Source of the DNA: Saccostrea echinata
Lineage: Eukaryota
Assembly (NCBI RefSeq): GCF_033153115.1
Contig: NW_026889803.1
Span: 5,890,001-5,954,000, forward strand
Direction of reading: 5' to 3'
Length of the DNA: 64,000 nucleotides
The notes beneath the pieces were generated by a model that worked only from the letters and a program-made list of their open reading frames with translations, was not told where the DNA came from and searched no databases. Positions 1 through 11,083 of this stretch are shown here, piece by piece (position 1 is the first letter of the stretch; every line of letters begins with the position of its first letter). The translations under genes and the position numbers were made by a program.

Positions 1-1112
1 ACCAAACTTGCATGGATGATGCATCTACTGATGGACACTACCACACTTGCTTCAAATGCTGGATCTGACCTACATTTTCCAGTTGAGTGACCAGGCTAAA
101 GTTTTTAGAGCAGGTCCATTCCCAAGTAACTAGAAGCCCTACCTTAACCAAACTTGCATGGATGATGCATCTAGGGATGGACATTACCACACTTGCTATA
201 GATGCTGGATCTGACCTAGATTCTTCAGATGAGTGACCAGGTTAAAGTTTTTGGAGCAGGTTCATTCCCAAGTAACTTAAGCCCTACCTTGACCAAACTT
301 GCATGGATGATGCATCTAGGGATGGACACTACCACACTTGCTTCAGATGCTGAATTAGACCTACATTTTTCAGATGAGTGACCAGGTTAAAATTATTTGA
401 GCAGGTCCATTCCCAAGTAACTATTAGGTCTACCTTAAACAAACTTGCATGGAAGATGCATCTAGGGATGAACACTACCACACTTGCTTCGGATGCTGGA
501 TCTGACCTAGATATTCCAGATGAGATACCAGGTAAAAGTTTTTGGAGCAGGTCCATTCCATAGTAACTATGAGCCTTACCTTGACCAAACTCACATGGAT
601 GATGCATCTTGGGATGTACGCTATCAAACCTGCTTCAGATGCTGGATTTGACCTAGATTTTCCACATGAGTGAATTTTAGCCATATTTTAACCAAATAAG
701 CATGGATGATGTAGCTAGGGATAGTCACTTCCAGACTTGCTTTGGATTCTGAATCTGACCTACATTTTCCAGATGAGTGACCAGGATAATTTATTTGGAG
801 TAGCTATATAACATGTCCTGTTATGATTAAACTTGCATAGATGGTGCATCTAAGGATGAAAACTTCCAGACTTACTTTGGATTGGAACTGACCAAAATTT
901 TCTTGATAAGTAAACAGAATAAACGTTTTTTGAACAGGTCTATTTCCAAATTACTATAATTCCTACTTAAACCAAACTTGCATGGATATTGATCTTGAGA
1001 TGTACACTAACTTAAAAAAGAATATGCTGTGAAATTTGCCTTACTTAAAGATACATTTGTAACATTGTAACATTCGTCGAGGTGAGCTTCGTAATCTTTG
1101 ATTACCTATGTT
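1..1112 (+). mobile_element. 3' part of a non-autonomous Helentron-like (HINE) element with a ~146-bp tandem satellite array
   Basis: Monomer start ACCAAACTTGCATGGATG recurs at 1, 147, 292, 438, 584 (period ~146) and decays to ~1000. It is followed by the typical 3' end: GGTGAGC, hairpin GTAATC-TTT-GATTAC, then TGTTT at ~1081-1112. Confidence 0.7.
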
Positions 1113-2582: not shown

Positions 2583-2633
2583 TAAAGTTTTTGTCAGGTG
2601 ACCACATGGATAATCTCTCCTTCTCGTCAGTAT

Positions 2634-2844
2634 TAAAGTAACTACCGAGGGTGTGTACTTATAATATTTATTAACAACTATATACAAATATACTCTTGTC
2701 GTGGGTTCTGGCCCGTGCTGACTCACCGTCTCTGCACCACGTCTGGTGTGCCTGACATCTTGGCGGTGAAAGAGGTTCGTGCGACTGTCCCGCCATCTGA
2801 CGTTGCATCATCAGTAGGTCATACCACGGGACAGTCGCACAGAT
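2634..2844 (-). repeat. 3' LTR (lacks its first ~6 nt)
   Basis: Direct repeat of 10401-10609; similarity stops at ...GCACAGAT. Confidence 0.93.
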
Positions 2845-3113
2845 TCTTTGAAAGGCGGGAGTCCACAGTGCGGGGGAGGGTCTGGAACCATCTCCAACGA
2901 TGGGGCGCTGTTAACGCCCACCCGGGCGGACGGCCCAGGGACGACTAGTGCCGGGGCGAGCCCCAGACAAAACACACCCAAGATAACTCCTGGGAAAGGG
3001 GTCCGGGATCGCTCCCAATTAAATACTTCCAGGCCCTAGGTCCGGGATAATTCCCAGGTAAAGAGTCTGGCCTGGCAGGGTACACTGGAGCGGGTCAAAG
3101 CCAGCTGACCCAC

Positions 3114-6100
3114 TCACCATTCCTGTAAAAACGCCAGAGTAACCCGTCTTACCCTGGGCCAAGATGGGGGCTCCAGAACAACACCAATGTTTGCTACCCG
3201 GGGTTCCCCCATACAATTGGGGCAGATATACTGATCCAGGGAGGAAGCCTCCTCTGAAGTGACCCCCACACAAACCCCGTGGAACCAACTGTCACACTGG
3301 TCGCATTGAATCATTAGCCCCCCATCATCCGGTCTACGACAGAAACAATAGAGCTCAGAGTCTGTCAGATCCCCATCTGACGACTTAGCGGACTCAGTAG
3401 AGGGCGACCGCACTTTACGTGGGCGCCCCCGTTTTTTCGGTATATGGGGAGGGTTGTCTGAGGACGAGCTCAACTGGGAAGGTCCAGGGACCACACTCGA
3501 GGGAGTTTTCTCCCCTGGGGACAATGGGACACTACTTAACTCACCACCTCCCTGGGACTGGGCTCTGAACTTCTCCTGATACAGGGACAGCCATAACGGT
3601 ATGTCCCGATCTACACACTTTTTCAGGCGATCATGATTGACAACCATCACTGTGAGCTTGGTCTTCACTCGGTAAAGGTGGGAACTTAACTTTTTCAAGA
3701 TAATACCTGGTTCCTTCCAGGAAGGGCTCAACTTTCTGCATTTCCCCTTGACAGTAGCCGTGTCAAGGACGTAAACTAGGTCACCTTCATTGTAAGTTCT
3801 GGCATGGACCTTCAAGTCATAATCCCTCTTCATTCGCTCCTCTGAGGTCCGGAGATGTCTCCGGGCTGTCTCATGAGCTGACTGGATGGTCTTCTCCAAA
3901 TTCACTACGTAGCCCTCAAGGTCAACAGCCGGGTCCCTCTGAGGTGGGGCATACATCAGATCAGCAGGGATATTCACCTCCCTGCCCAACATCAGCTTGT
4001 TCGCCGTAAAGCCTGTGTTCCGGTTGACTGCAGAGCGCAAGGCACCTGCTATCTGGGCAAGATGTTCATCCCAGCAGTTCTGGGCCTTGTCTATATAACA
4101 ACGCACAGCATCCATCAAGGTTCTATTATATCTTTCTACCTGGCCATTGGCTGAGGGACGATAAGGAGTGGTGTGGGCCTTATGGATCTGCAACAAGTCG
4201 CACACTGCTGTGAAGAGCTTACTTTCAAAGTTCTTACCCTGGTCGGTGAAGATCTGGAAGGGACAGCCAAAGCAACCAAAGAACTGATCGACCGCAGCAG
4301 TAGCTGTTGCCTCAGCAGTCTGAGTGGGCAGAGGGACACACTCCACCCACTTGGTGAACTGATCCACCATGACAAGTACATATTCATTACCCTGTTTAGT
4401 CCGGGGTAGGGACCCCAGAAAATCAAGATGGACTTTCTCCATAGGGGCACCAGCATGGTGCTTAATCATCTCTGCCCGGGCATGGCGCTGAGGATGCTTA
4501 TTCCTGCTGCAAGGACCACAGGTGCTCACGAACTGTTCTGCCTCCCTCATCACGCCATACCATAAAAATCTATCACGCAGGCGTGCCTTAGTTCTATCAA
4601 TGCCCTGGTGGCCTGCTGCTGGGACGTCATGGCACAGGCGTAGAACCTCCTTCCTCAACTCTTCAGGGACAACTAAAAGTCTAGTCTTCACACTCCCCTT
4701 CCCCACCTCTTTCCAAAGGACCTTGTCCTGATCTAAGGTGAAGGCCGTCCTATGGAGCCAATAGTTTTTAACTGCGGGACTTGCAAGGAACATCACACCT
4801 TCCTCTGGAGCTACATCATCGTCCAACCAGTCAAGAAATTGACTGATTTCCGAGTCCCTTGACTGGCATAAACTCATTTCCTCTGGGGTCAAACCCACAA
4901 ACGACAACAGGCTACCAGAATCGTCAGGGGGTGCCCCCACTACTGCCACAAAGTGGGGGTGCTTAGCAAGGCGAATCTGGGTCCGGAAGGGCCCCTCTAC
5001 TGACTCCTCATCATCAAAGTCAACTTCCGGGGGAGAGTAATGACCAATGCGACCTAACAATCCCCCAGAAACATAACCATAGGCCACTTCACTAACTGAA
5101 GGTTGGGCTGGTCCAGGGGGAGAGGGCAAGTCACTGGCTTCCTCAGTATTGCCCTCAGACTCTAAAACTGACTCCTCCACAGTTTCCACCTCCGAGCTAG
5201 GCGTATATATCCAGCTTCCAGGACTGGCCAAGGGTGCAATATTGTCAACCTCTTCTGCAAAGACATTCCAGGTCTGTTGAGCCTTAACACACCTCGGGCA
5301 TCCGCCACAAGGTAAGTCGCTGGGGTGTATGGTGACATCAGCTCCAGCACAGATGGCACTAGAAGGCAACCGGGACAGGGCATCCGCATTGACATGGCGT
5401 CGCCCCAGGTGATGCTGTATCTCCATGTCATACTGGCTGAGCTCTTCCATCCATCTGGCGAGTTGATCCTGGGGGTTTCTAAAGTTAAGGAGCCAAATAA
5501 GACTATGATGGTCCGTCCTCAAAATAAATCTCCTCCCCAGCAAGTAATGGCCAAACAGGCGGGTAAAGCGGATAACTGCCTGCAGCTCCTTTTGGGTTGT
5601 GCAGTACTTGCGCTGCTCCGGGGATAGACTGAGGCTTCCATAAGATATGGGTCTCTCCTGGCCATCTTGTAACTGGGAGAGTTCGACCCCTATGGCTTCA
5701 TTGGAGGCATAGGTGTCAAGTATAAACTCTCCATCGGGAATGGGGAGGGCCAGGACAGGCGGAGACGTAAGGGCCCTCTTTAAACCATCAAAAGCTGCTT
5801 GTTGCTCCGGGCCCCAGGCGAAGGGGTTCTTGCCTGTGATCTTGTAGATGGGCAGTGCCCACTCAGCATAACCCACAATGAATCCTCGGTGGTAGTTAGC
5901 AAACCCAAGGAACCTCTCTACCTCCTTTGTGTTGCCGGGGACAGCCCAGTCCTTGACTGCAGCAATGTAATCATCTCCCATCTCAATGCCTTCCTTGCTT
6001 ACCCGCCGCCCCAGGAATTCAACCTTGGTTTGGAAAAGTTTGCATTTCTTCGGCTTAAACTTAAAGTCGTACTCCCGGAAACGCATGAACACAGATCGCA

Positions 6101-6821
6101 AGTTCTCCAGGTGTTCCAGGAAGTCCTGACCTAAAACCAGGGCGTCATCTAAGAAGGCCAGAACAATACTCAAAGTAAGGCCTCTGAGTACAAGGTTCAT
6201 CGCCCTAGAAAAGGTAGCCGGGGCATTGCATAGACCAAACCCCATGCACACAAACTCAAACAGACCATACTTCATCAAAAATGCTGTCTTCTTCCTATCC
6301 TGGGGACGGATCTTTATCTGATGGAAGGCAGAGTTGGCGTCGAGCTTCGAAAACCATACATTCCCTGTAAGGTTGTCCAAGCACTCATCTATCAAAGGCA
6401 GGGGGAATACATCCTTCCGAGTCACCTTGTTCAAATGGCGGTAGTCCAAGCACCATCTGACCTGACCGTCTTTCTTCCTAATCAGAACTGGAGCTGAGGC
6501 CCATTCAGACATGGAGGGCTGTATCACACCAGCCTCCAGCATTTTCTTTAGGTGGGATTCCTCCTCACCAGCAAAGAACATGGGAGTACGTCTCATCCGC
6601 TCCTTTACAGGGGGTGCGTCTCCGGTATCTATCTCGTGTTCTAATGCGGTGAAGTTCCCAAAGTCGAACTCGCTCCGAGCAAATACATCTTGAAATTCCG
6701 AAGGCAGACTGGCCAGCGAGGCCCTCTTTTCTAAACCGAGTTCCACCGAGGAGCGCTCTAACAAATCCTGCAGAAATTCAGGCACCTCCGGATGTGGCTC
6801 CTGCCCCCCGATCCCCATCAT
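3114..6821 (-). CDS. pol: Gypsy Pol: reverse transcriptase, RNase H and integrase with C-terminal AT-hook and PHD finger
   Basis: RT motifs WCLDYRHLN, FSKLDANSAFHQI, GFGLCNAPATF, LAFLDD; RNase H LDTYAS...KELQAV...RTDHHSL...NADALSR; integrase HHCC (CHD..AGH...CGPC) and D-D-E (HLDF/TDQG/QVER); then KKRGRPRK and a C4HC3 PHD. Confidence 0.96.
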   Translation of the reverse strand: MMGIGGQEPHPEVPEFLQDLLERSSVELGLEKRASLASLPSEFQDVFARSEFDFGNFTALEHEIDTGDAPPVKERMRRTPMFFAGEEESHLKKMLEAGVIQPSMSEWASAPVLIRKKDGQVRWCLDYRHLNKVTRKDVFPLPLIDECLDNLTGNVWFSKLDANSAFHQIKIRPQDRKKTAFLMKYGLFEFVCMGFGLCNAPATFSRAMNLVLRGLTLSIVLAFLDDALVLGQDFLEHLENLRSVFMRFREYDFKFKPKKCKLFQTKVEFLGRRVSKEGIEMGDDYIAAVKDWAVPGNTKEVERFLGFANYHRGFIVGYAEWALPIYKITGKNPFAWGPEQQAAFDGLKRALTSPPVLALPIPDGEFILDTYASNEAIGVELSQLQDGQERPISYGSLSLSPEQRKYCTTQKELQAVIRFTRLFGHYLLGRRFILRTDHHSLIWLLNFRNPQDQLARWMEELSQYDMEIQHHLGRRHVNADALSRLPSSAICAGADVTIHPSDLPCGGCPRCVKAQQTWNVFAEEVDNIAPLASPGSWIYTPSSEVETVEESVLESEGNTEEASDLPSPPGPAQPSVSEVAYGYVSGGLLGRIGHYSPPEVDFDDEESVEGPFRTQIRLAKHPHFVAVVGAPPDDSGSLLSFVGLTPEEMSLCQSRDSEISQFLDWLDDDVAPEEGVMFLASPAVKNYWLHRTAFTLDQDKVLWKEVGKGSVKTRLLVVPEELRKEVLRLCHDVPAAGHQGIDRTKARLRDRFLWYGVMREAEQFVSTCGPCSRNKHPQRHARAEMIKHHAGAPMEKVHLDFLGSLPRTKQGNEYVLVMVDQFTKWVECVPLPTQTAEATATAAVDQFFGCFGCPFQIFTDQGKNFESKLFTAVCDLLQIHKAHTTPYRPSANGQVERYNRTLMDAVRCYIDKAQNCWDEHLAQIAGALRSAVNRNTGFTANKLMLGREVNIPADLMYAPPQRDPAVDLEGYVVNLEKTIQSAHETARRHLRTSEERMKRDYDLKVHARTYNEGDLVYVLDTATVKGKCRKLSPSWKEPGIILKKLSSHLYRVKTKLTVMVVNHDRLKKCVDRDIPLWLSLYQEKFRAQSQGGGELSSVPLSPGEKTPSSVVPGPSQLSSSSDNPPHIPKKRGRPRKVRSPSTESAKSSDGDLTDSELYCFCRRPDDGGLMIQCDQCDSWFHGVCVGVTSEEASSLDQYICPNCMGEPRVANIGVVLEPPSWPRVRRVTLAFLQEW

Positions 6822-7470
6822 CCAGGCTGCCTACTGTCCGCACCAAGTAGGGCACAGGCTGGTGTGGATCAGCTTCCACTGCAGTACCAACAAGGCTACC
6901 CCCTGTCAATGTCACATCTCGATCTGAAGCGTTCACTACACAGATTACTGCACTGTCCCCTCCCACATGGTATGTATGGAGCATAAGAAGCACATCAGAC
7001 TGCATATCAGTGCCAGGGACCACCACAAAATCATCCAGCTTCTGATCCAGGTGACAGAGGCATAAAACAACAGAGCCAGCTGGAACTCGTACCTTCCGGG
7101 CCAAAGTCACCCTGGCCTCCGGAATCTCCTCAGCTCGGCCGAAGTTCATTTTAATTGTCTCTCCTCCGAAGGTCAAAGTCCCATGCTCTAAATCTAATTG
7201 AGCCTTACGGGCATGAAGAAACTCCATGCCCAGCAACATGGGGTCCTGCTAGGGGGCAACATAAAGGTCAACCTCTTGAGTCTGCGTACCTATGCTCACT
7301 GCCACGGGTCTCACCATGAAACCTTTCAACTTGGTGTCCTTACCCGCCTGAGTCATAGTAACATGTTTCCATATCGGGGGCTTGGGCTCTAGCTGGTCAT
7401 AAACCTGAGTCAACAAAACACTGACCTCAGCCCCCGTGTCAACCACAGCACTCACCCGTGTGCCTTGCAC
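6778..7470 (-). pseudogene. Gypsy aspartic protease and linker, split over two ORFs
   Basis: VSAVVDTGAEVS in ORF 7249-7470; MLLGMEFL in ORF 6778-7239; a frame break separates it from the RT ORF. Confidence 0.85.
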
Positions 7471-7975
7471 AAGTAAACTAACAGAAAACCCTGTAGATGG
7501 ACGCAGCTATCCAATAGGTATGGTGGGCTCATTCCCCTCAACCTCTGGTGACCTCTGACCAGAGCCACCAGGCTTGGTCCTCCCAAAGCCCTGGAACTTC
7601 CTAGTCCTATCCCGAGCTGGTCCAAGTGGTTCCGGAGTGGAGTGGGGGGCCACAAGCTTCCCCACTTCCTCGTCCAAGGATGCCTCTTCCTCCTCAGCTG
7701 AGAATAGCTCTGGCGATTGGGGCCTCTCAAAGCGGACCCTCAATCTGCGCCACTTGCACCTATGCCGCATACAGAAGGGGGGTTGACTAGCCCCCTGCTC
7801 CTTACTCTCCGAGTCTGTCCTCTCTGGGGACTGCCCTGGGTTCATAAATCGAACTGCCTGGGAGGGCCCTCCCTGGGATCCAGGCCTTCCATTCTTTGGT
7901 CCCCTCTCCTGGGACTCGGACCTACAATACTTCTCACCAAGGGGTCCCTTCATCCGGGCTCCGCCCCGCAGCCCA

Positions 7976-10156
7976 TCAGTAGCTACTAACTTCCCAGCAG
8001 CTTGGGCAATCTCTACGGAAATGCCCCACCTCTACACACTTAAAACACACAGTGGGCTTCGGGTCTCGCTCTGCCAATCTGGGTGGCAGGGTACCAGTCC
8101 ACTGGGGTTTAGGGAGGGGGGCAGATCCTGTTTGCTTAACAGCTTGTTCCAGCTTTTCCATTCTGCTCTGGAGGGCTTCCAGCTCCTCCCCAGCAGCAAC
8201 ATTTACCATCCCGGGATGTCCTGTTCGGCGTCCTCATCGGAGATCAACTTCCGCAGCTCTTTCTTGGTCTTAGGCCTATGTAGCTGGGAGTGCAGGTAGT
8301 ACTGCATTCGCTCCACGGCTTCATCCATGGTCCTGGGATGCCCGTCGAGTGCGTAGAGGCCAGTGTCTCGGTCCTCGGCTCCATAACACAGCCTAGGTAT
8401 GGCGTGTGTGTGCAAGTCCGGCACACAAGGGAAGGCTCGCGTCGCCAAGGTCAGCACCCTGTCTGCCCACTGACGAAGTGACTCTCCTGATTCTGATTGG
8501 CAGCCTGGAAGTTGAGTTGATGAGTGAGATCGGGGGCAGAGGAGCCAAAACGCTTCTCAAATCTCTGCAAGATCTCACCTAGGCGGAGCTGGCTACTGGT
8601 TTCTAACAGCAAGGTGTAGTATTCACTGGCTGCCCCTTCAAGGGAAAAACAAAACTGGTCGTGCTGCTCCTCCTCTGTCCACAATTGGCTGCGAGATAAC
8701 CTAACGAACTTGTGCAAAAATGCCTTCCAGCTGGTCTTACCATCATACCTAAGGTCCTTATACCGGGGCTTACCCCCAGTGGCTGTCCTAACTGGGTATG
8801 GTGTGGTGCCCTGGTAACCAAGTGAGCCATAATGTACTGGTGTACTGAAGTTGCAAGCCTGGTTAGCCGGGACTGACTGACTAGCATAGTGTCCCGGATG
8901 GGCTGCCCCATACATGTTAGGTTGAACATGTGCTATCTTCTCCCCCTCCCTTCCAAAATGACAGGCTGGGGTATCGGGATGGGCAGGACTACAAGTCATT
9001 GACACAGGAACACTATGGTGCTGTAGTGCACTGGGCATAGCCATACCATGGAGTGTGGCTGGAGTACTCTCGCCTCGATACAACAGAGACTGGGCGAGGT
9101 CGGGTACTGGGGATTGGGCATGCCTACCCTCAGGATTGATGTACACTGATTGGGGCGCATGGTAAGGTGTGCTTGTGGAACTAGCATACAATGATGTAGG
9201 TTGGGGTCTGGCAGCAGTCACACCAGTGTCTAAAGGCCAAGAGACTAGGTTACCATTTGCTTGTGACTGAACCAGCGCTGGGGACACTCCAACATTTACT
9301 GGGGCTGGGGCAGATATAGTGCGTGGCATTGAGCTCCGGGGTTGCAAATCATCCCCAGGGAGAGAGGGCGCACCAAAATCTGCTAGTCTAGGTTGGCTCT
9401 GTATGTGTGCAGGGTCCCAGGTGAGCCCTAGAGGATCTACGGACCTCACATGTTGACGATCATACTCGGGGTGAGTTGTGCGGGCCTCACAGGCCTCTCA
9501 GGTTGCTGACTAACACACTGTGTATGGGACAGAAGGGCGGGGTCAAGTGGGTGTGGTACAACCTCACCCAAGCGGCTTGGTCTATAACCCATAGTAGCAG
9601 GGCTCCCCAGGTTAGCTGTGTCTTCCACAAGGACAGGGTGGCTACTAACTGAATGCACATGCCCTAAAGAATATGGATGCTCTAACCCTGAATTTGAAGG
9701 GGCCTCACTATATTCTTGTTTAGGGTGGGTACAACCCACAGTGCTACCAGGTGAGCTACACCTACACAGGCTACCTAGAGAGGACACCACGGAATCACTT
9801 GACATCATCCCTGGTGAGCCAAATTGAGGCTGGGCAAACCTTACCTCTTTTCCTGACTTTCCATGTAATACACTACCCTCCCCACAGGGGATGCCCGAGT
9901 GCAGGCCGGGCATAGGTGTAGAGGGACCCCCCAGGGGCAACCCCCCTCCCATGTGGCCTGACATTGGCTGAGCAAAAGGTGTGTGACAGGAGGCAAAATG
10001 CTCACTCCCGCTATAAGCGTATGGTGAATAACCCCCCTCCCCGGGGTATCCCCCCACCCTACCCGGAGTGTGAGGGGTGATATTGTCTGACCGCGTGACA
10101 GCCGGGTCACTACCCAGACCTAAAGCCGACACGGCTTCCTCCAGGGACATACCCAT
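7976..10156 (-). pseudogene. gag: Gypsy gag, frameshifted: long P/S/G-rich N-terminus, capsid-like core and CCHC knuckle
   Basis: LRYDGKTSWKAFLHKF...LEGAASEYY capsid-like motif; CFKCVEVGHFRRDC knuckle in ORF 7976-8209; split over ORFs 9446-10192, 8451-9449, 8203-8457, 7976-8209. Confidence 0.85.
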
Positions 10157-10388
10157 AATAAAATAGTACAAAATAATTTTCAAATGAATCACAGTCTACA
10201 AAATCACTAAATCACTTGCAATAAATATATACACAAATTGATTCCAGTTGATTCAAAATAATATTGTATCACAAAAATTTTGCAAATATCACACGTGCTC
10301 TCAGCACCAAAAACGGCGGCTAAAAACAATGCCGAGAAAAAAAAAACAAACTGACAGCAGTGCGGGAATCTAGCACCGGGCCCCGCGA

Positions 10389-10399
10389 GTTGGGCGCCA
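10389..10399 (-). promoter_or_regulatory. Primer-binding site, tRNA-Lys(CUU)-like
   Basis: Minus strand TGGCGCCCAAC lies 1 nt from the LTR end and matches the start of the canonical Lys1,2 PBS TGGCGCCCAACGTGGGGC. Confidence 0.85.
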
Positions 10400-10400
10400 G

Positions 10401-10615
10401 TAAAGTAACTACCGAGGGTGGTACTTATAATCTTTATTAACAACTATATACAAATATACTCTGTCGTGGGTTCTGGCCCGTGCTGACTCACCGTCTCTGT
10501 ACCACGTCTGGTGTGCCTGACATCTTGGCGGTGAAAGAGGTCCGTGCGACTGTCCCGCCATCTGACGTAGCATCATCAGTAGGTCGTACCACGGGACAGT
10601 CGCACAGATACTACA
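10401..10615 (-). repeat. 5' LTR (TGTAG...CTTTA on the minus strand)
   Basis: Direct repeat of 2634-2844, flanked by the TSD on one side and the PBS on the other. Confidence 0.95.
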
Positions 10616-11083
10616 GTATTTTTAATATGTGCACATTTTATGTGTGTGTTCATGAGATACTATCATAGGACGTCGGATTGCAGCTCTCCAACTTAATATA
10701 AACACGGATTGTTAAAGAAGTTCATAAAAAAACCTTTGGAAATCAAGGATGAAAAATTTGAAGTTGAAGAAGGGAAATTCAAGTGTTAATAAAAAATCAA
10801 GAAAAAAGATACCCGTTGATCATTTGACATATTCGAGAGCTGTCGCATGAAAAAAATAAACCGCTGTGTCAGGGTCAATAACTCTTCATCTATGGATGCA
10901 GTGCAGCTGAATTTTATTCTAGTTGAGCAAAGAACATAGCAAAGATGGTATGTCCTGCTAAAACGCTCTATTGTATCATTGCTGCGGTGTTTTTTCCTTT
11001 GATGTCCACTATGTTTTTATTTTTGATACACCATGACTAACTGTGCTCTAACAACCATGCTCTATCACGATAGAACACACCAG

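What the first reader, a model, noticed from the sequence alone, without database searches (positions are those of the whole stretch)
3114..3560. Gypsy integrase ending in an AT-hook and an H3K4me3-type PHD finger: candidate chromatin-reading integration-targeting system
Seen: in the same open frame as the DDE integrase, after the GPY/F-like motif (SWKEPG) and a Ser/Pro linker, come KKRGRPRK (3414-3437) and a complete C4HC3 finger YCFC-RRPDDGGLMIQC-DQC-DSWFH-GVC-...-YICPNC (3213-3350). Established: RGRP is the AT-hook core that binds AT-rich minor grooves, and the Y/M/W residues are the aromatic cage of H3K4me3-reading PHDs (BPTF/ING/PHF2/DIDO type). Chromoviruses use a chromodomain at this same position to target integration. 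Inference: this animal Gypsy lineage swapped in a two-part module (active-promoter mark plus AT-rich DNA), which would bias it toward open chromatin rather than heterochromatin. PHDs occur in other transposon proteins, so how novel this placement is needs checking.
Basis: partly seen in the sequence, partly recalled or inferred. Interest (0 to 1): 0.85.

Follow-up and report, generated by a model that had tools for sequence, protein, structure and literature searches.

The report
Oyster Gypsy integrase with PHD finger
An oyster Gypsy retrotransposon really does carry an AT-hook and an H3K4me3-reader-type PHD finger at the end of its integrase, and this PHD fusion is conserved across many marine-invertebrate Gypsy elements, but such fusions are already listed in published surveys and whether they steer integration is untested.

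Summary
The 1235-aa pol ORF (window 3114-6821, minus strand) runs RT, RNase H and integrase. It then has a Ser/Pro linker with KKRGRPRK (3414-3437) and a complete PHD finger (3213-3350; Pfam PHD E 4.8e-11).

The closest solved structures by sequence and fold are BPTF, PHF2, PHF8, DIDO1, CFP1/Spp1 and TAF3, most of them solved bound to H3K4me3.

The fusion is not specific to this copy:
- The genome, almost certainly Saccostrea echinata, holds at least 22 close copies. Eight lie in intact gag-pol frames of 2357-2725 aa.
- Two further Gypsy families in the same genome also have a C-terminal PHD.
- 78 fetched proteins carry integrase C-terminus plus PHD. The named ones are oysters, mussels, an abalone and a sea urchin. 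The cage Tyr/Phe, Met and Trp are almost invariant.

The AT-hook is a later addition found only in this sub-lineage.

Integration targeting to H3K4me2/3 chromatin is the best-supported mechanism, but it is inferred only. Flank composition, within-family dN/dS and a docking test were all uninformative.

Gypsy 'Integrase_H2C2 rve PHD' architectures are already listed in the supplementary tables of Grau-Bove et al. 2022. This is therefore a new member of a known kind. First readers of this scan noted the same fusion on two other pieces of this genome.

The parts
2634..10615 (-). Whole Ty3/Gypsy LTR retrotransposon copy of the short (2357-aa type) form. Its gag-PR part is broken; pol is open.
   Evidence: LTR pair and 4-bp target-site duplication. 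Collinear at 95.3% with an intact copy, L032+L022.
2630..2633 (.). Target-site duplication GTAT (+ strand), 3' side of the element.
   Evidence: Same 4 bases at 10616-10619.
10616..10619 (.). Target-site duplication GTAT (+ strand), 5' side of the element.
10401..10615 (-). 5' LTR, starting TGTAGT... as in the other copies.
2634..2844 (-). 3' LTR, 96.7% identical to the 5' LTR. This copy has lost the first 6 nt (TGTAGT) together with the G-run of the polypurine tract that other copies keep.
10382..10399 (-). Primer-binding site, beginning TGGCGCCCAAC, one base after the 5' LTR.
   Evidence: Read directly. The same sequence follows the 5' LTR of the intact copy L032.
6808..10156 (-). gag (PNMA-like capsid, CCHC knuckle) and protease region. 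It is degenerate in this copy: the frame shifts near 9468, 8488 and 6800, and there are further stops.
   Evidence: tblastn of the intact L032 gag-pol onto the window. Domains of the intact copy. ORF list.
3114..6821 (-). Open pol frame of 1235 aa (RT, RNase H, integrase, linker, PHD), stop codon included.
6006..6482 (-). Reverse transcriptase (aa 114-272).
   Evidence: Pfam RVT_1, E 2.7e-28.
5430..5816 (-). RNase H (aa 336-464).
   Evidence: Pfam RT_RNaseH / RT_RNaseH_2.
4155..4670 (-). Integrase zinc-binding (H2C2) domain and catalytic core (aa 718-889).
   Evidence: Pfam Integrase_H2C2 E 3.4e-17 and rve E 5.2e-14.
3597..3824 (-). Integrase C-terminal SH3-like region with the GPY/F-like motif (SWKEPG at 3705-3722; W-K-G-P-G in most copies) and NHDRLKKC.
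   Evidence: Alignment A1. Homologues hit Pfam Integrase_p58_C and SH3_Tf2-1.
3351..3596 (-). Ser/Pro-rich linker, predicted disordered.
   Evidence: AF2 pLDDT 49-65. Pairwise dN/dS against the window copy ranges 0.34-1.17; pooled 0.42.
3414..3437 (-). AT-hook KKRGRPRK (RKRGRPRK in most copies).
   Evidence: RGRP core kept in 24 of the 29 loci that cover it. Also present in relatives P0165 and P0166. Absent from the other integrase-PHD lineages examined.
3213..3350 (-). PHD finger (C4HC3) of the BPTF/PHF2/DIDO class. Cage residues are Tyr (YCFC), Met (LMIQC) and Trp (SWFH). Asp sits at the BPTF-Y17 position.
   Evidence: Pfam. PDB sequence hits. AF2 pLDDT about 95. Foldseek rmsd 0.9-1.2 A to BPTF, DIDO and PHF2.
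3117..3212 (-). Short disordered tail after the PHD. It contains the junction (about 3172-3183) where this short form lacks 1107 nt (369 codons, in frame) that the 2725-aa long form has.

Best explanation
This is a degenerate copy of a young, abundant Ty3/Gypsy LTR retrotransposon of a rock oyster, almost certainly Saccostrea echinata. Downstream of its SH3-like C-terminal domain, the integrase continues in frame into a disordered Ser/Pro linker with one canonical AT-hook, then into a PHD finger of the H3K4me3-reader class. SHOWN: the fusion, its domain identities, its conservation in this genome and across diverged marine-invertebrate Gypsy lineages, and near-invariance of the Zn ligands and of the Tyr/Met/Trp cage. 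INFERRED: the PHD docks the integrase-cDNA complex onto nucleosomes whose H3 tail carries K4me2/3, that is, active or poised 5' gene regions. This would bias insertion toward open chromatin, the mirror image of chromovirus chromodomains that read H3K9me. In this sub-lineage the AT-hook adds low-specificity minor-groove contact with AT-rich DNA, much as LEDGF/p75 combines a PWWP reader with AT-hooks to tether HIV integrase. It may also double as a nuclear localisation signal.
For: One open frame from RT to PHD. At least 22 copies are at least 89% identical over this module; eight sit in intact frames of 2357-2725 aa and all eight keep every Zn ligand and the cage residues. Two further Gypsy families in the genome end in a PHD: L031 (2145 aa, PHD 8 aa from the stop) and L033 (1323 aa, PHD 2 aa from the stop). 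The best PDB sequence matches are BPTF (1.6e-16), PHF2, CFP1, PHF8, DIDO1, Spp1 and TAF3. The AF2 model of the finger has pLDDT about 95 and superposes on H3K4me3-bound BPTF, DIDO, PHF2 and PPS at 0.8-1.5 A. In 78 integrase-PHD proteins, the first cage aromatic is Y/F in 73, Met is kept in 76 and Trp in 77. All 47 aligned members score Pfam PHD, and some also score integrase C-terminal domains. Named sources are Saccostrea, Crassostrea, Mytilus, Haliotis and Diadema. Precedent from the literature: an ING2 PHD tethered to HIV integrase via the LEDGF IBD moved integration toward TSSs (PMC8149907); chromodomains direct Gypsy integration to H3K9me chromatin (Gao et al. 2008, as cited).
Against: There is no direct evidence for histone binding or for an insertion bias. 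Nineteen 3' flanks of about 1 kb have GC 0.336 against 0.336 in the window, CpG o/e 0.78 against 0.68, and no tRNA genes, so no promoter-like signature appears. This copy lies next to tandem repeats. Within-family dN/dS on the PHD is not significantly below 1 (pooled 0.83, p 0.34), because most differences are post-insertion decay. The fourth cage position is Asp rather than an aromatic. The AT-hook is also a plausible NLS and is missing from most PHD-bearing relatives.
Confidence: 0.55

Rival explanations
1. The module is a general chromatin tether or nuclear-entry aid rather than a site selector. PHD plus basic AT-hook/NLS simply keeps the pre-integration complex on chromosomes, for example through mitosis or for nuclear import. 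This would raise integration efficiency without a strong positional bias.
For: No compositional bias was seen in 19 flanks. KKRGRPRKVR is also a classical basic NLS-like cluster. A second family (L031) has a basic stretch but no GRP core at the same place.
Against: The cage residues that discriminate methylated K4 are kept in 73-77 of 78 diverged proteins. That fits selection for mark-specific reading better than generic tethering. Only 6 of 91 linkers have a basic cluster.
Confidence: 0.2
2. The PHD serves the element after or apart from integration. Examples would be a released C-terminal protein, or Gag-Pol itself, that binds active-chromatin marks or a non-histone N-terminus to promote the element's own transcription, evade silencing or recruit a host factor.
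For: PHF2's PHD also binds a non-histone peptide (VRK1; PDB 7m10 and 8f8y among the hits). Long-form copies carry 369 further residues after the PHD, and a third family carries an extra metallo-beta-lactamase-fold ORF right after it. This suggests a modular accessory region. PHDs in LINE ORF1 and other TE proteins are not attached to an integrase.
Against: In most of the integrase-PHD proteins inspected the PHD lies 50-97 aa after the integrase GPY/F-like W.GP motif, usually within 14 aa of the stop. This is the position used by chromodomains for targeting.
Confidence: 0.15
3. The PHD reads unmodified or differently modified H3 (K4me0, K4me1/2, or another tail), so the target chromatin is not active promoters.
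For: Asp replaces the fourth cage aromatic. The engineered BPTF Y17E (PDB 2ri7), which prefers H3K4me2, is the top sequence hit. EBS/SHL-type relatives in the hit list also bind H3K27me3.
Against: Tyr, Met and Trp of the cage are intact. My recollection, not tested here, is that natural H3K4me3 readers such as ING and TAF3 also lack the fourth aromatic. 19 of the 78 relatives carry W/Y/F at that position.
Confidence: 0.1

Closest known systems
Chromoviruses (Ty3/Gypsy elements with a chromodomain at the integrase C-terminus, e.g. MAGGY, Tf1)
   Same: An LTR retrotransposon of the same superfamily with a histone-mark reader fused in frame after the integrase C-terminal domain. The presumed role is tethering integration to marked chromatin.
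   Different: The predicted mark is H3K4me2/3 (active chromatin) instead of H3K9me (heterochromatin). No functional data exist.
PHD-bearing Gypsy gene models catalogued by Grau-Bove et al. 2022 (orthogroup PHD.HG9.1; e.g. [quoted passage not shown]
   Same: The same domain order, with the PHD directly after the Gypsy integrase core. An echinoderm example even carries an extra hydrolase domain after the PHD, recalling the metallo-beta-lactamase ORF of the third oyster family.
   Different: Those entries are only rows in a supplementary table. Homology to the oyster elements was not tested here. No AT-hook, cage analysis or mollusc members are reported there, and C. gigas scored absent for that orthogroup.
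BPTF/NURF301 C-terminal PHD finger (also PHF2/PHF8, DIDO1, CFP1/Spp1, TAF3)
   Same: 47-58% identity over the finger, the same fold at about 1 A rmsd, and the same Tyr/Trp cage with Met (as in PHF2/PHF8/DIDO). It is the probable kind of host gene from which the finger was captured.
   Different: The element's finger has Asp where BPTF has Tyr17, a loop one residue shorter, no adjacent bromodomain, and it sits on an integrase.
LEDGF/p75 (host tether of HIV integrase) and the engineered LEDGF-IBD/ING2-PHD fusion
   Same: A histone-mark reader plus AT-hooks cooperate to hold an integrase on chromatin. The engineered PHD version redirected integration to TSSs (PMC8149907).
   Different: The domain composition of LEDGF is from my own knowledge.
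Other TE-borne PHD fingers (CR1/Jockey LINE ORF1, Rehavkus, Chlamydomonas REM1 and Gypsy-7a_cRei, Chlamys PLEs, cnidarian PYGO-like PHD retrotransposons)
   Same: Capture of a PHD reader by a mobile element. The suggested role is in chromatin recognition.
   Different: They differ in element classes or in position within the polyprotein (for example between RNase H and integrase in Gypsy-7a_cRei), or in PHD subtype (PYGO-like).

Membership tests
Ty3/Gypsy (Metaviridae) LTR retrotransposon | Two LTRs flanked by a short target-site duplication | tested here: met
   LTRs at 2634-2844 and 10401-10615, 96.7% identical; 4-bp TSD GTAT.
Ty3/Gypsy (Metaviridae) LTR retrotransposon | Domain order gag - PR - RT - RNase H - IN | tested here: met
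   Pfam on the window pol and on the intact copy L032, which shows PNMA-like gag, CCHC, aspartyl protease, RVT_1 and RNase H.
Ty3/Gypsy (Metaviridae) LTR retrotransposon | PBS after the 5' LTR and polypurine tract before the 3' LTR | tested here: met
   TGGCGCCCAAC follows the 5' LTR. The A/G-rich tract with a G-run precedes the 3' LTR in the other copies and is deleted in the window copy.
PHD finger (Pfam PF00628) | C4HC3 zinc ligands with canonical spacing, scoring above the curated cut-off | tested here: met
   42.9 bits against a cut-off of 24, covering profile positions 1-47 of 47. Most ligands are invariant and the rest at least 90% conserved in alignment A2.
PHD finger (Pfam PF00628) | Interleaved two-zinc fold | tested here: met
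   AF2 pLDDT about 95 over the finger. Foldseek probability 1.00 and rmsd 0.9-1.2 A to solved PHD fingers. This is a predicted structure, not a solved one.
H3K4me3-reader subclass of PHD fingers (BPTF/PHF2/DIDO/ING/TAF3 type) | Aromatic cage: N-terminal Tyr/Trp before the first Cys pair, Met or aromatic before the third Cys, Trp before the His | tested here: met
   The three residues are Y1158, M1170 and W1179 of pol by my numbering. They align to BPTF Y10, Y23 and W32 and to the PHF2 equivalents. They are kept in 73, 76 and 77 of 78 relatives.
H3K4me3-reader subclass of PHD fingers (BPTF/PHF2/DIDO/ING/TAF3 type) | Fourth cage aromatic (BPTF Y17) | tested here: not met
   Asp at that position (RRPDDGG) aligns with E17 of the BPTF Y17E mutant 2ri7. 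Among relatives: D 38, W 14, Y/F 5, H 4, E 2 and 15 unassigned. This residue is not present in all natural readers (own knowledge).
H3K4me3-reader subclass of PHD fingers (BPTF/PHF2/DIDO/ING/TAF3 type) | Measured preferential binding to H3K4me3/2 peptides | not testable with these tools
   Needs ITC or a peptide array.
AT-hook | R-G-R-P core flanked by Lys/Arg in a disordered region | tested here: met
   KKRGRPRKVR at 3414-3437+. The region is disordered in the AF2 model. The core is kept in 24 of the 29 loci that cover it, and the exceptions are single changes within the core in individual copies.
AT-hook | Minor-groove binding to AT-rich DNA | not testable with these tools
   Only indirect evidence: a weak R-T-A-Y target consensus and 0.31 GC in the first 10 flank bases against 0.36 background, n=19.
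Chromovirus | Chromodomain at the integrase C-terminus | tested here: not met
   No Chromo family hit in Pfam at E up to 0.01. The C-terminal domain is a PHD finger.

The most novel reading that the evidence does not exclude
The integrase-PHD Gypsy lineage of molluscs and echinoderms is a natural euchromatin-targeting counterpart of chromoviruses. The PHD reads H3K4me2/3 and directs new insertions to active 5' gene regions. Sub-lineages tune this in two ways: a fourth cage residue that is Asp or Trp/Tyr, possibly setting me2 versus me3 preference, and an added AT-hook.
Probability: 0.4. Interest if true: 0.7.

Novelty: new member of a known kind. Interest (0 to 1): 0.45.

Why it matters
Chromodomain-guided integration into heterochromatin is the textbook case of a retrotransposon reading the histone code. 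Whether TE-borne PHD fingers do the opposite, steering insertions into active chromatin, has been suggested repeatedly but never tested. This oyster family offers a clean system for that test. It has many near-identical young copies with intact frames and a PHD whose methyl-lysine cage is conserved across about 80 diverged relatives. It also has natural variants: Asp versus aromatic at the fourth cage residue, with or without the AT-hook, and with or without a 369-aa extension. There is a practical annotation point too. Fragments of these elements are named as host genes ('inhibitor of growth protein 4-like' in Haliotis rubra) or as bacterial proteins in a symbiont MAG.

Tried and rejected
1. 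Within-family dN/dS on the PHD. Pairwise values against the window copy were 0.23-0.84 on 1-10 synonymous changes. Four independent pairs pooled gave pN/pS 0.83, p 0.34. This is inconclusive because most differences are post-insertion decay; cross-lineage conservation was used instead.

2. Insertion-site context. In 19 3' flanks, GC and CpG o/e equal the background, there are no shared repeats and no tRNA genes. This gives no support for or against promoter targeting. No gene annotation or chromatin data were available.

3. Complex prediction of the PHD (+2 Zn) with the oyster H3 tail returned no verdict, because a control scored higher. It is not evidence either way.

4. The idea that the AT-hook and PHD were captured together from a BPTF-like host gene. 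One BPTF-like protein (P0133) has a GRP motif about 75 aa before its PHD. However, the alignment over the linker is low-complexity, and most integrase-PHD lineages lack the hook. Rejected as unsupported.

5. The 369-aa post-PHD extension has no Pfam family and no convincing ESM Atlas neighbour.

7. Literature searches found no paper describing this mollusc lineage or testing a TE-borne PHD.
Full report
**What is at the coordinates**

The minus strand of window 3114-6821 is one uninterrupted 1235-aa frame. Pfam places several domains in it:
- RVT_1 at aa 114-272
- RT_RNaseH at aa 362-464
- Integrase_H2C2 at aa 718-776
- rve at aa 792-889
- a full-length PHD finger at aa 1159-1203 (E 4.8e-11; 42.9 bits against a cut-off of 24)

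KKRGRPRK is at 3414-3437. The finger, from YCFC to CPNC, is at 3213-3350. The GPY/F-like SWKEPG is at 3705-3722.

**The element**

- The frame lies in an LTR retrotransposon spanning 2634-10615 on the minus strand.
- BLAST gives LTRs of about 211 bp that are 96.7% identical.
- Comparison with other copies shows the true LTR begins TGTAGT. This extends the 5' LTR to 10615 and reveals a 4-bp target-site duplication, GTAT, at 2630-2633 and 10616-10619.
- A primer-binding site beginning TGGCGCCCAAC follows the 5' LTR.
- In this copy the 3' LTR has lost its first six bases together with the G-run of the polypurine tract.
- The gag-protease part (6808-10156) is broken by frame changes near 9468, 8488 and 6800 and by further stops. 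RT to PHD stays open.

**Is the fusion family-wide?**

Yes. The last 168 aa found 103 places in the window's own 923-Mb assembly. Twenty-two are at least 89% identical over at least 149 residues. Eight of these sit in open frames of 2357, 2363 or 2725 aa.

One such copy, read in full (L032+L022), is a single gag-pol frame. It runs PNMA-like capsid, CCHC knuckle, aspartyl protease, RT, RNase H, integrase, AT-hook and PHD.

The main subfamily is 98.3-99.5% identical in this region, so it is young. The window copy is 96.0-96.7% identical to it.

A RefSeq protein of Saccostrea echinata (P0004, LOC133174957) is 100% identical to the translation of copy L005. The genome is therefore almost certainly that oyster.

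In the copy-by-copy alignment, the RGRP core is intact in 24 of the 29 loci that cover it. The exceptions are single changes inside the core in individual copies, several of which also carry stops. The eight copies in long open frames keep the cage residues and every Zn ligand inspected.

**Beyond this family**

Two other Gypsy families in the genome also end in a PHD:
- L031: a 2145-aa gag-PR-RT-RH-IN-PHD frame, with the finger 8 aa from the stop.
- L033: a 1323-aa PR-RT-RH-IN-PHD frame, with the finger 2 aa from the stop.

A HMMER scan of 1.84 billion representatives with pol aa 1000-1235 gave 6931 hits at E up to 0.001. Among the proteins fetched in this and the word-index searches, 78 show the same arrangement: the integrase C-terminal signature (W.GP ... 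NHDRLKKC), then 50-97 aa later the same type of finger, usually within 14 aa of the C-terminus.

All 47 members of alignment A2 score Pfam PHD. Eleven also score Integrase_p58_C and three score SH3_Tf2-1.

Sources that carry a name:
- Saccostrea echinata
- Crassostrea virginica
- Mytilus galloprovincialis and M. edulis
- Haliotis rubra, mis-named 'inhibitor of growth protein 4-like'
- the sea urchin Diadema antillarum
- a Candidatus Thiodiazotropha MAG, which I take to be host contamination

The remaining proteins are unnamed contigs from ENA, JGI or Logan.

**What kind of PHD**

By sequence, the best solved relatives are BPTF (E 1.6e-16), PHF2, CFP1, PHF8, DIDO1, EBS, Spp1 and TAF3. An AlphaFold2 model built on A2 has pLDDT of about 95 over the finger, with low confidence over the linker, AT-hook and tail. 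Foldseek superposes the finger on BPTF, DIDO, KIAA1718, PHF2, PPS and Spp1 at 0.8-1.5 A. Many of these structures are H3K4me3 complexes.

In the HMMER alignments, the element's Tyr, Met and Trp fall on BPTF Y10, Y23 and W32 and on the PHF2 equivalents. BPTF Y17 is replaced by Asp, and the top hit is in fact the engineered Y17E mutant solved with H3K4me2.

Across the 78 relatives:

| Cage position | Conservation |
|---|---|
| First aromatic | Y/F in 73 of 78 |
| Met | 76 of 78 |
| Trp | 77 of 78 |
| Fourth position (BPTF Y17) | Asp 38, Trp 14, Tyr/Phe 5, His 4, Glu 2, unassigned 15 |

This deep conservation of the residues that recognise methyl-lysine is the main evidence for function.

There are too few changes, many of them post-insertion (pairwise 0.23-0.84; pooled 0.83, p 0.34).

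**The AT-hook**

The motif is canonical and lies in a predicted disordered stretch. It recurs in two relatives of 58% and 50% identity, P0165 and P0166. Otherwise integrase-PHD proteins have a short linker. The median is 19 aa after NHDRLKKC; 6 of 91 have any basic cluster and 1 of 91 has a hook.

The PHD is therefore ancestral to the lineage, and the long linker with the AT-hook is a later addition in this sub-lineage. It was not a two-part module acquired at once. The stretch would also serve as a basic NLS.

**Mechanism**

The architecture is shown. What it does is inferred from three things: position (the same place as the chromovirus chromodomain), class of reader, and precedent. One precedent is that tethering an ING2 PHD to HIV integrase through the LEDGF IBD moved integration toward TSSs (PMC8149907). 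Another is that chromodomains send Gypsy elements to H3K9me chromatin (Gao et al. 2008, cited).

I could not find an insertion bias:
- Nineteen 3' flanks match background GC (0.336 against 0.336) and nearly match CpG o/e (0.78 against 0.68).
- They share no repeat and hold no tRNA gene.
- The target sites show only a weak, roughly palindromic R-T-A-Y consensus and mild AT-richness in the first 10 bases.

Without gene annotation or chromatin maps this neither supports nor refutes promoter targeting.

**Novelty**

TE-borne PHD fingers are well known. Examples include:
- CR1 LINEs (Kapitonov and Jurka 2003)
- Rehavkus
- Chlamydomonas REM1 and Gypsy-7a_cRei
- Chlamys PLEs

Grau-Bove et al. 2022 state that Chromo and PHD domains often co-occur with reverse transcriptases and integrases, and they describe PYGO-like PHD retrotransposons in cnidarians. 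Their supplementary table lists 'Integrase_H2C2 rve PHD' Gypsy models, including:
- Acanthaster planci XP_022111688.1, with a TatD_DNase domain after the PHD
- Chlamydomonas PNW70767 and PNW77671

These sit in an orthogroup of 152 genes from 20 species in which C. gigas and Lottia score absent.

I found no paper that describes the mollusc lineage, the BPTF-like cage, the AT-hook, or any functional test. I therefore file this as a new member of a known kind. First readers of this scan noted the same fusion on two other pieces of this genome.

**Limits**

Comparisons were pairwise between natural copies.

Noticed in passing
L022:1947-3053 (G000:C33, long-form copy); junction in the window at about 3172-3183: Two forms of the element exist. 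The 2725-aa form has 369 extra residues right after the PHD. The commoner 2357-aa form, including the window copy, lacks exactly 1107 nt in frame. The extra region has no Pfam family, but it shares a block with a Cys-x3-4-Cys ... His-x4-His motif with Crassostrea virginica LOC111114177 (E 3e-11).
   Followed up: partly
L033:4406-5959 (G000:C27:14339205-14340755) and at least 7 near-identical places (C36, C5, C6), plus several more diverged pairs: A third PHD-ending Gypsy family carries an extra 517-aa ORF immediately after, and overlapping, the PHD. This ORF has a metallo-beta-lactamase-fold domain (Pfam Lactamase_B, E 2.5e-14). It sits next to the PHD in every copy checked. An Acanthaster Gypsy model in the literature has a TatD_DNase domain in the same position.
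   Followed up: partly
L031:371-6808 (G000:C25:26558370-26564807): An intact 2145-aa single-frame gag-PR-RT-RH-IN-PHD element of a second family, about 37% identical in the C-terminal module. It has a basic stretch but no GRP core before the finger.
   Followed up: partly
Proteins P0005 and P0234 (public records XP_046566019.1, MCM8922319.1): Fragments of integrase-PHD Gypsy elements are annotated as 'inhibitor of growth protein 4-like' in Haliotis rubra and as a DDE integrase of a Candidatus Thiodiazotropha MAG. These are likely mis-annotation and host contamination, respectively.
   Followed up: no
window 1-1000 and 1795-2483: Tandem arrays of about 146-bp units and about 156-bp units lie directly beside the 3' end of the element. 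The insertion therefore sits next to satellite-like repeats.
   Followed up: no
window (whole): The window contains 405 N. They were left as they are.
   Followed up: no
3' flanks of L001-L018 and L025: Target sites of the family show a weak palindromic consensus R-T-A-Y over the 4-bp duplication (purine 17/19, T 16/19, A 13/19). About half of positions 4-7 are T.
   Followed up: partly
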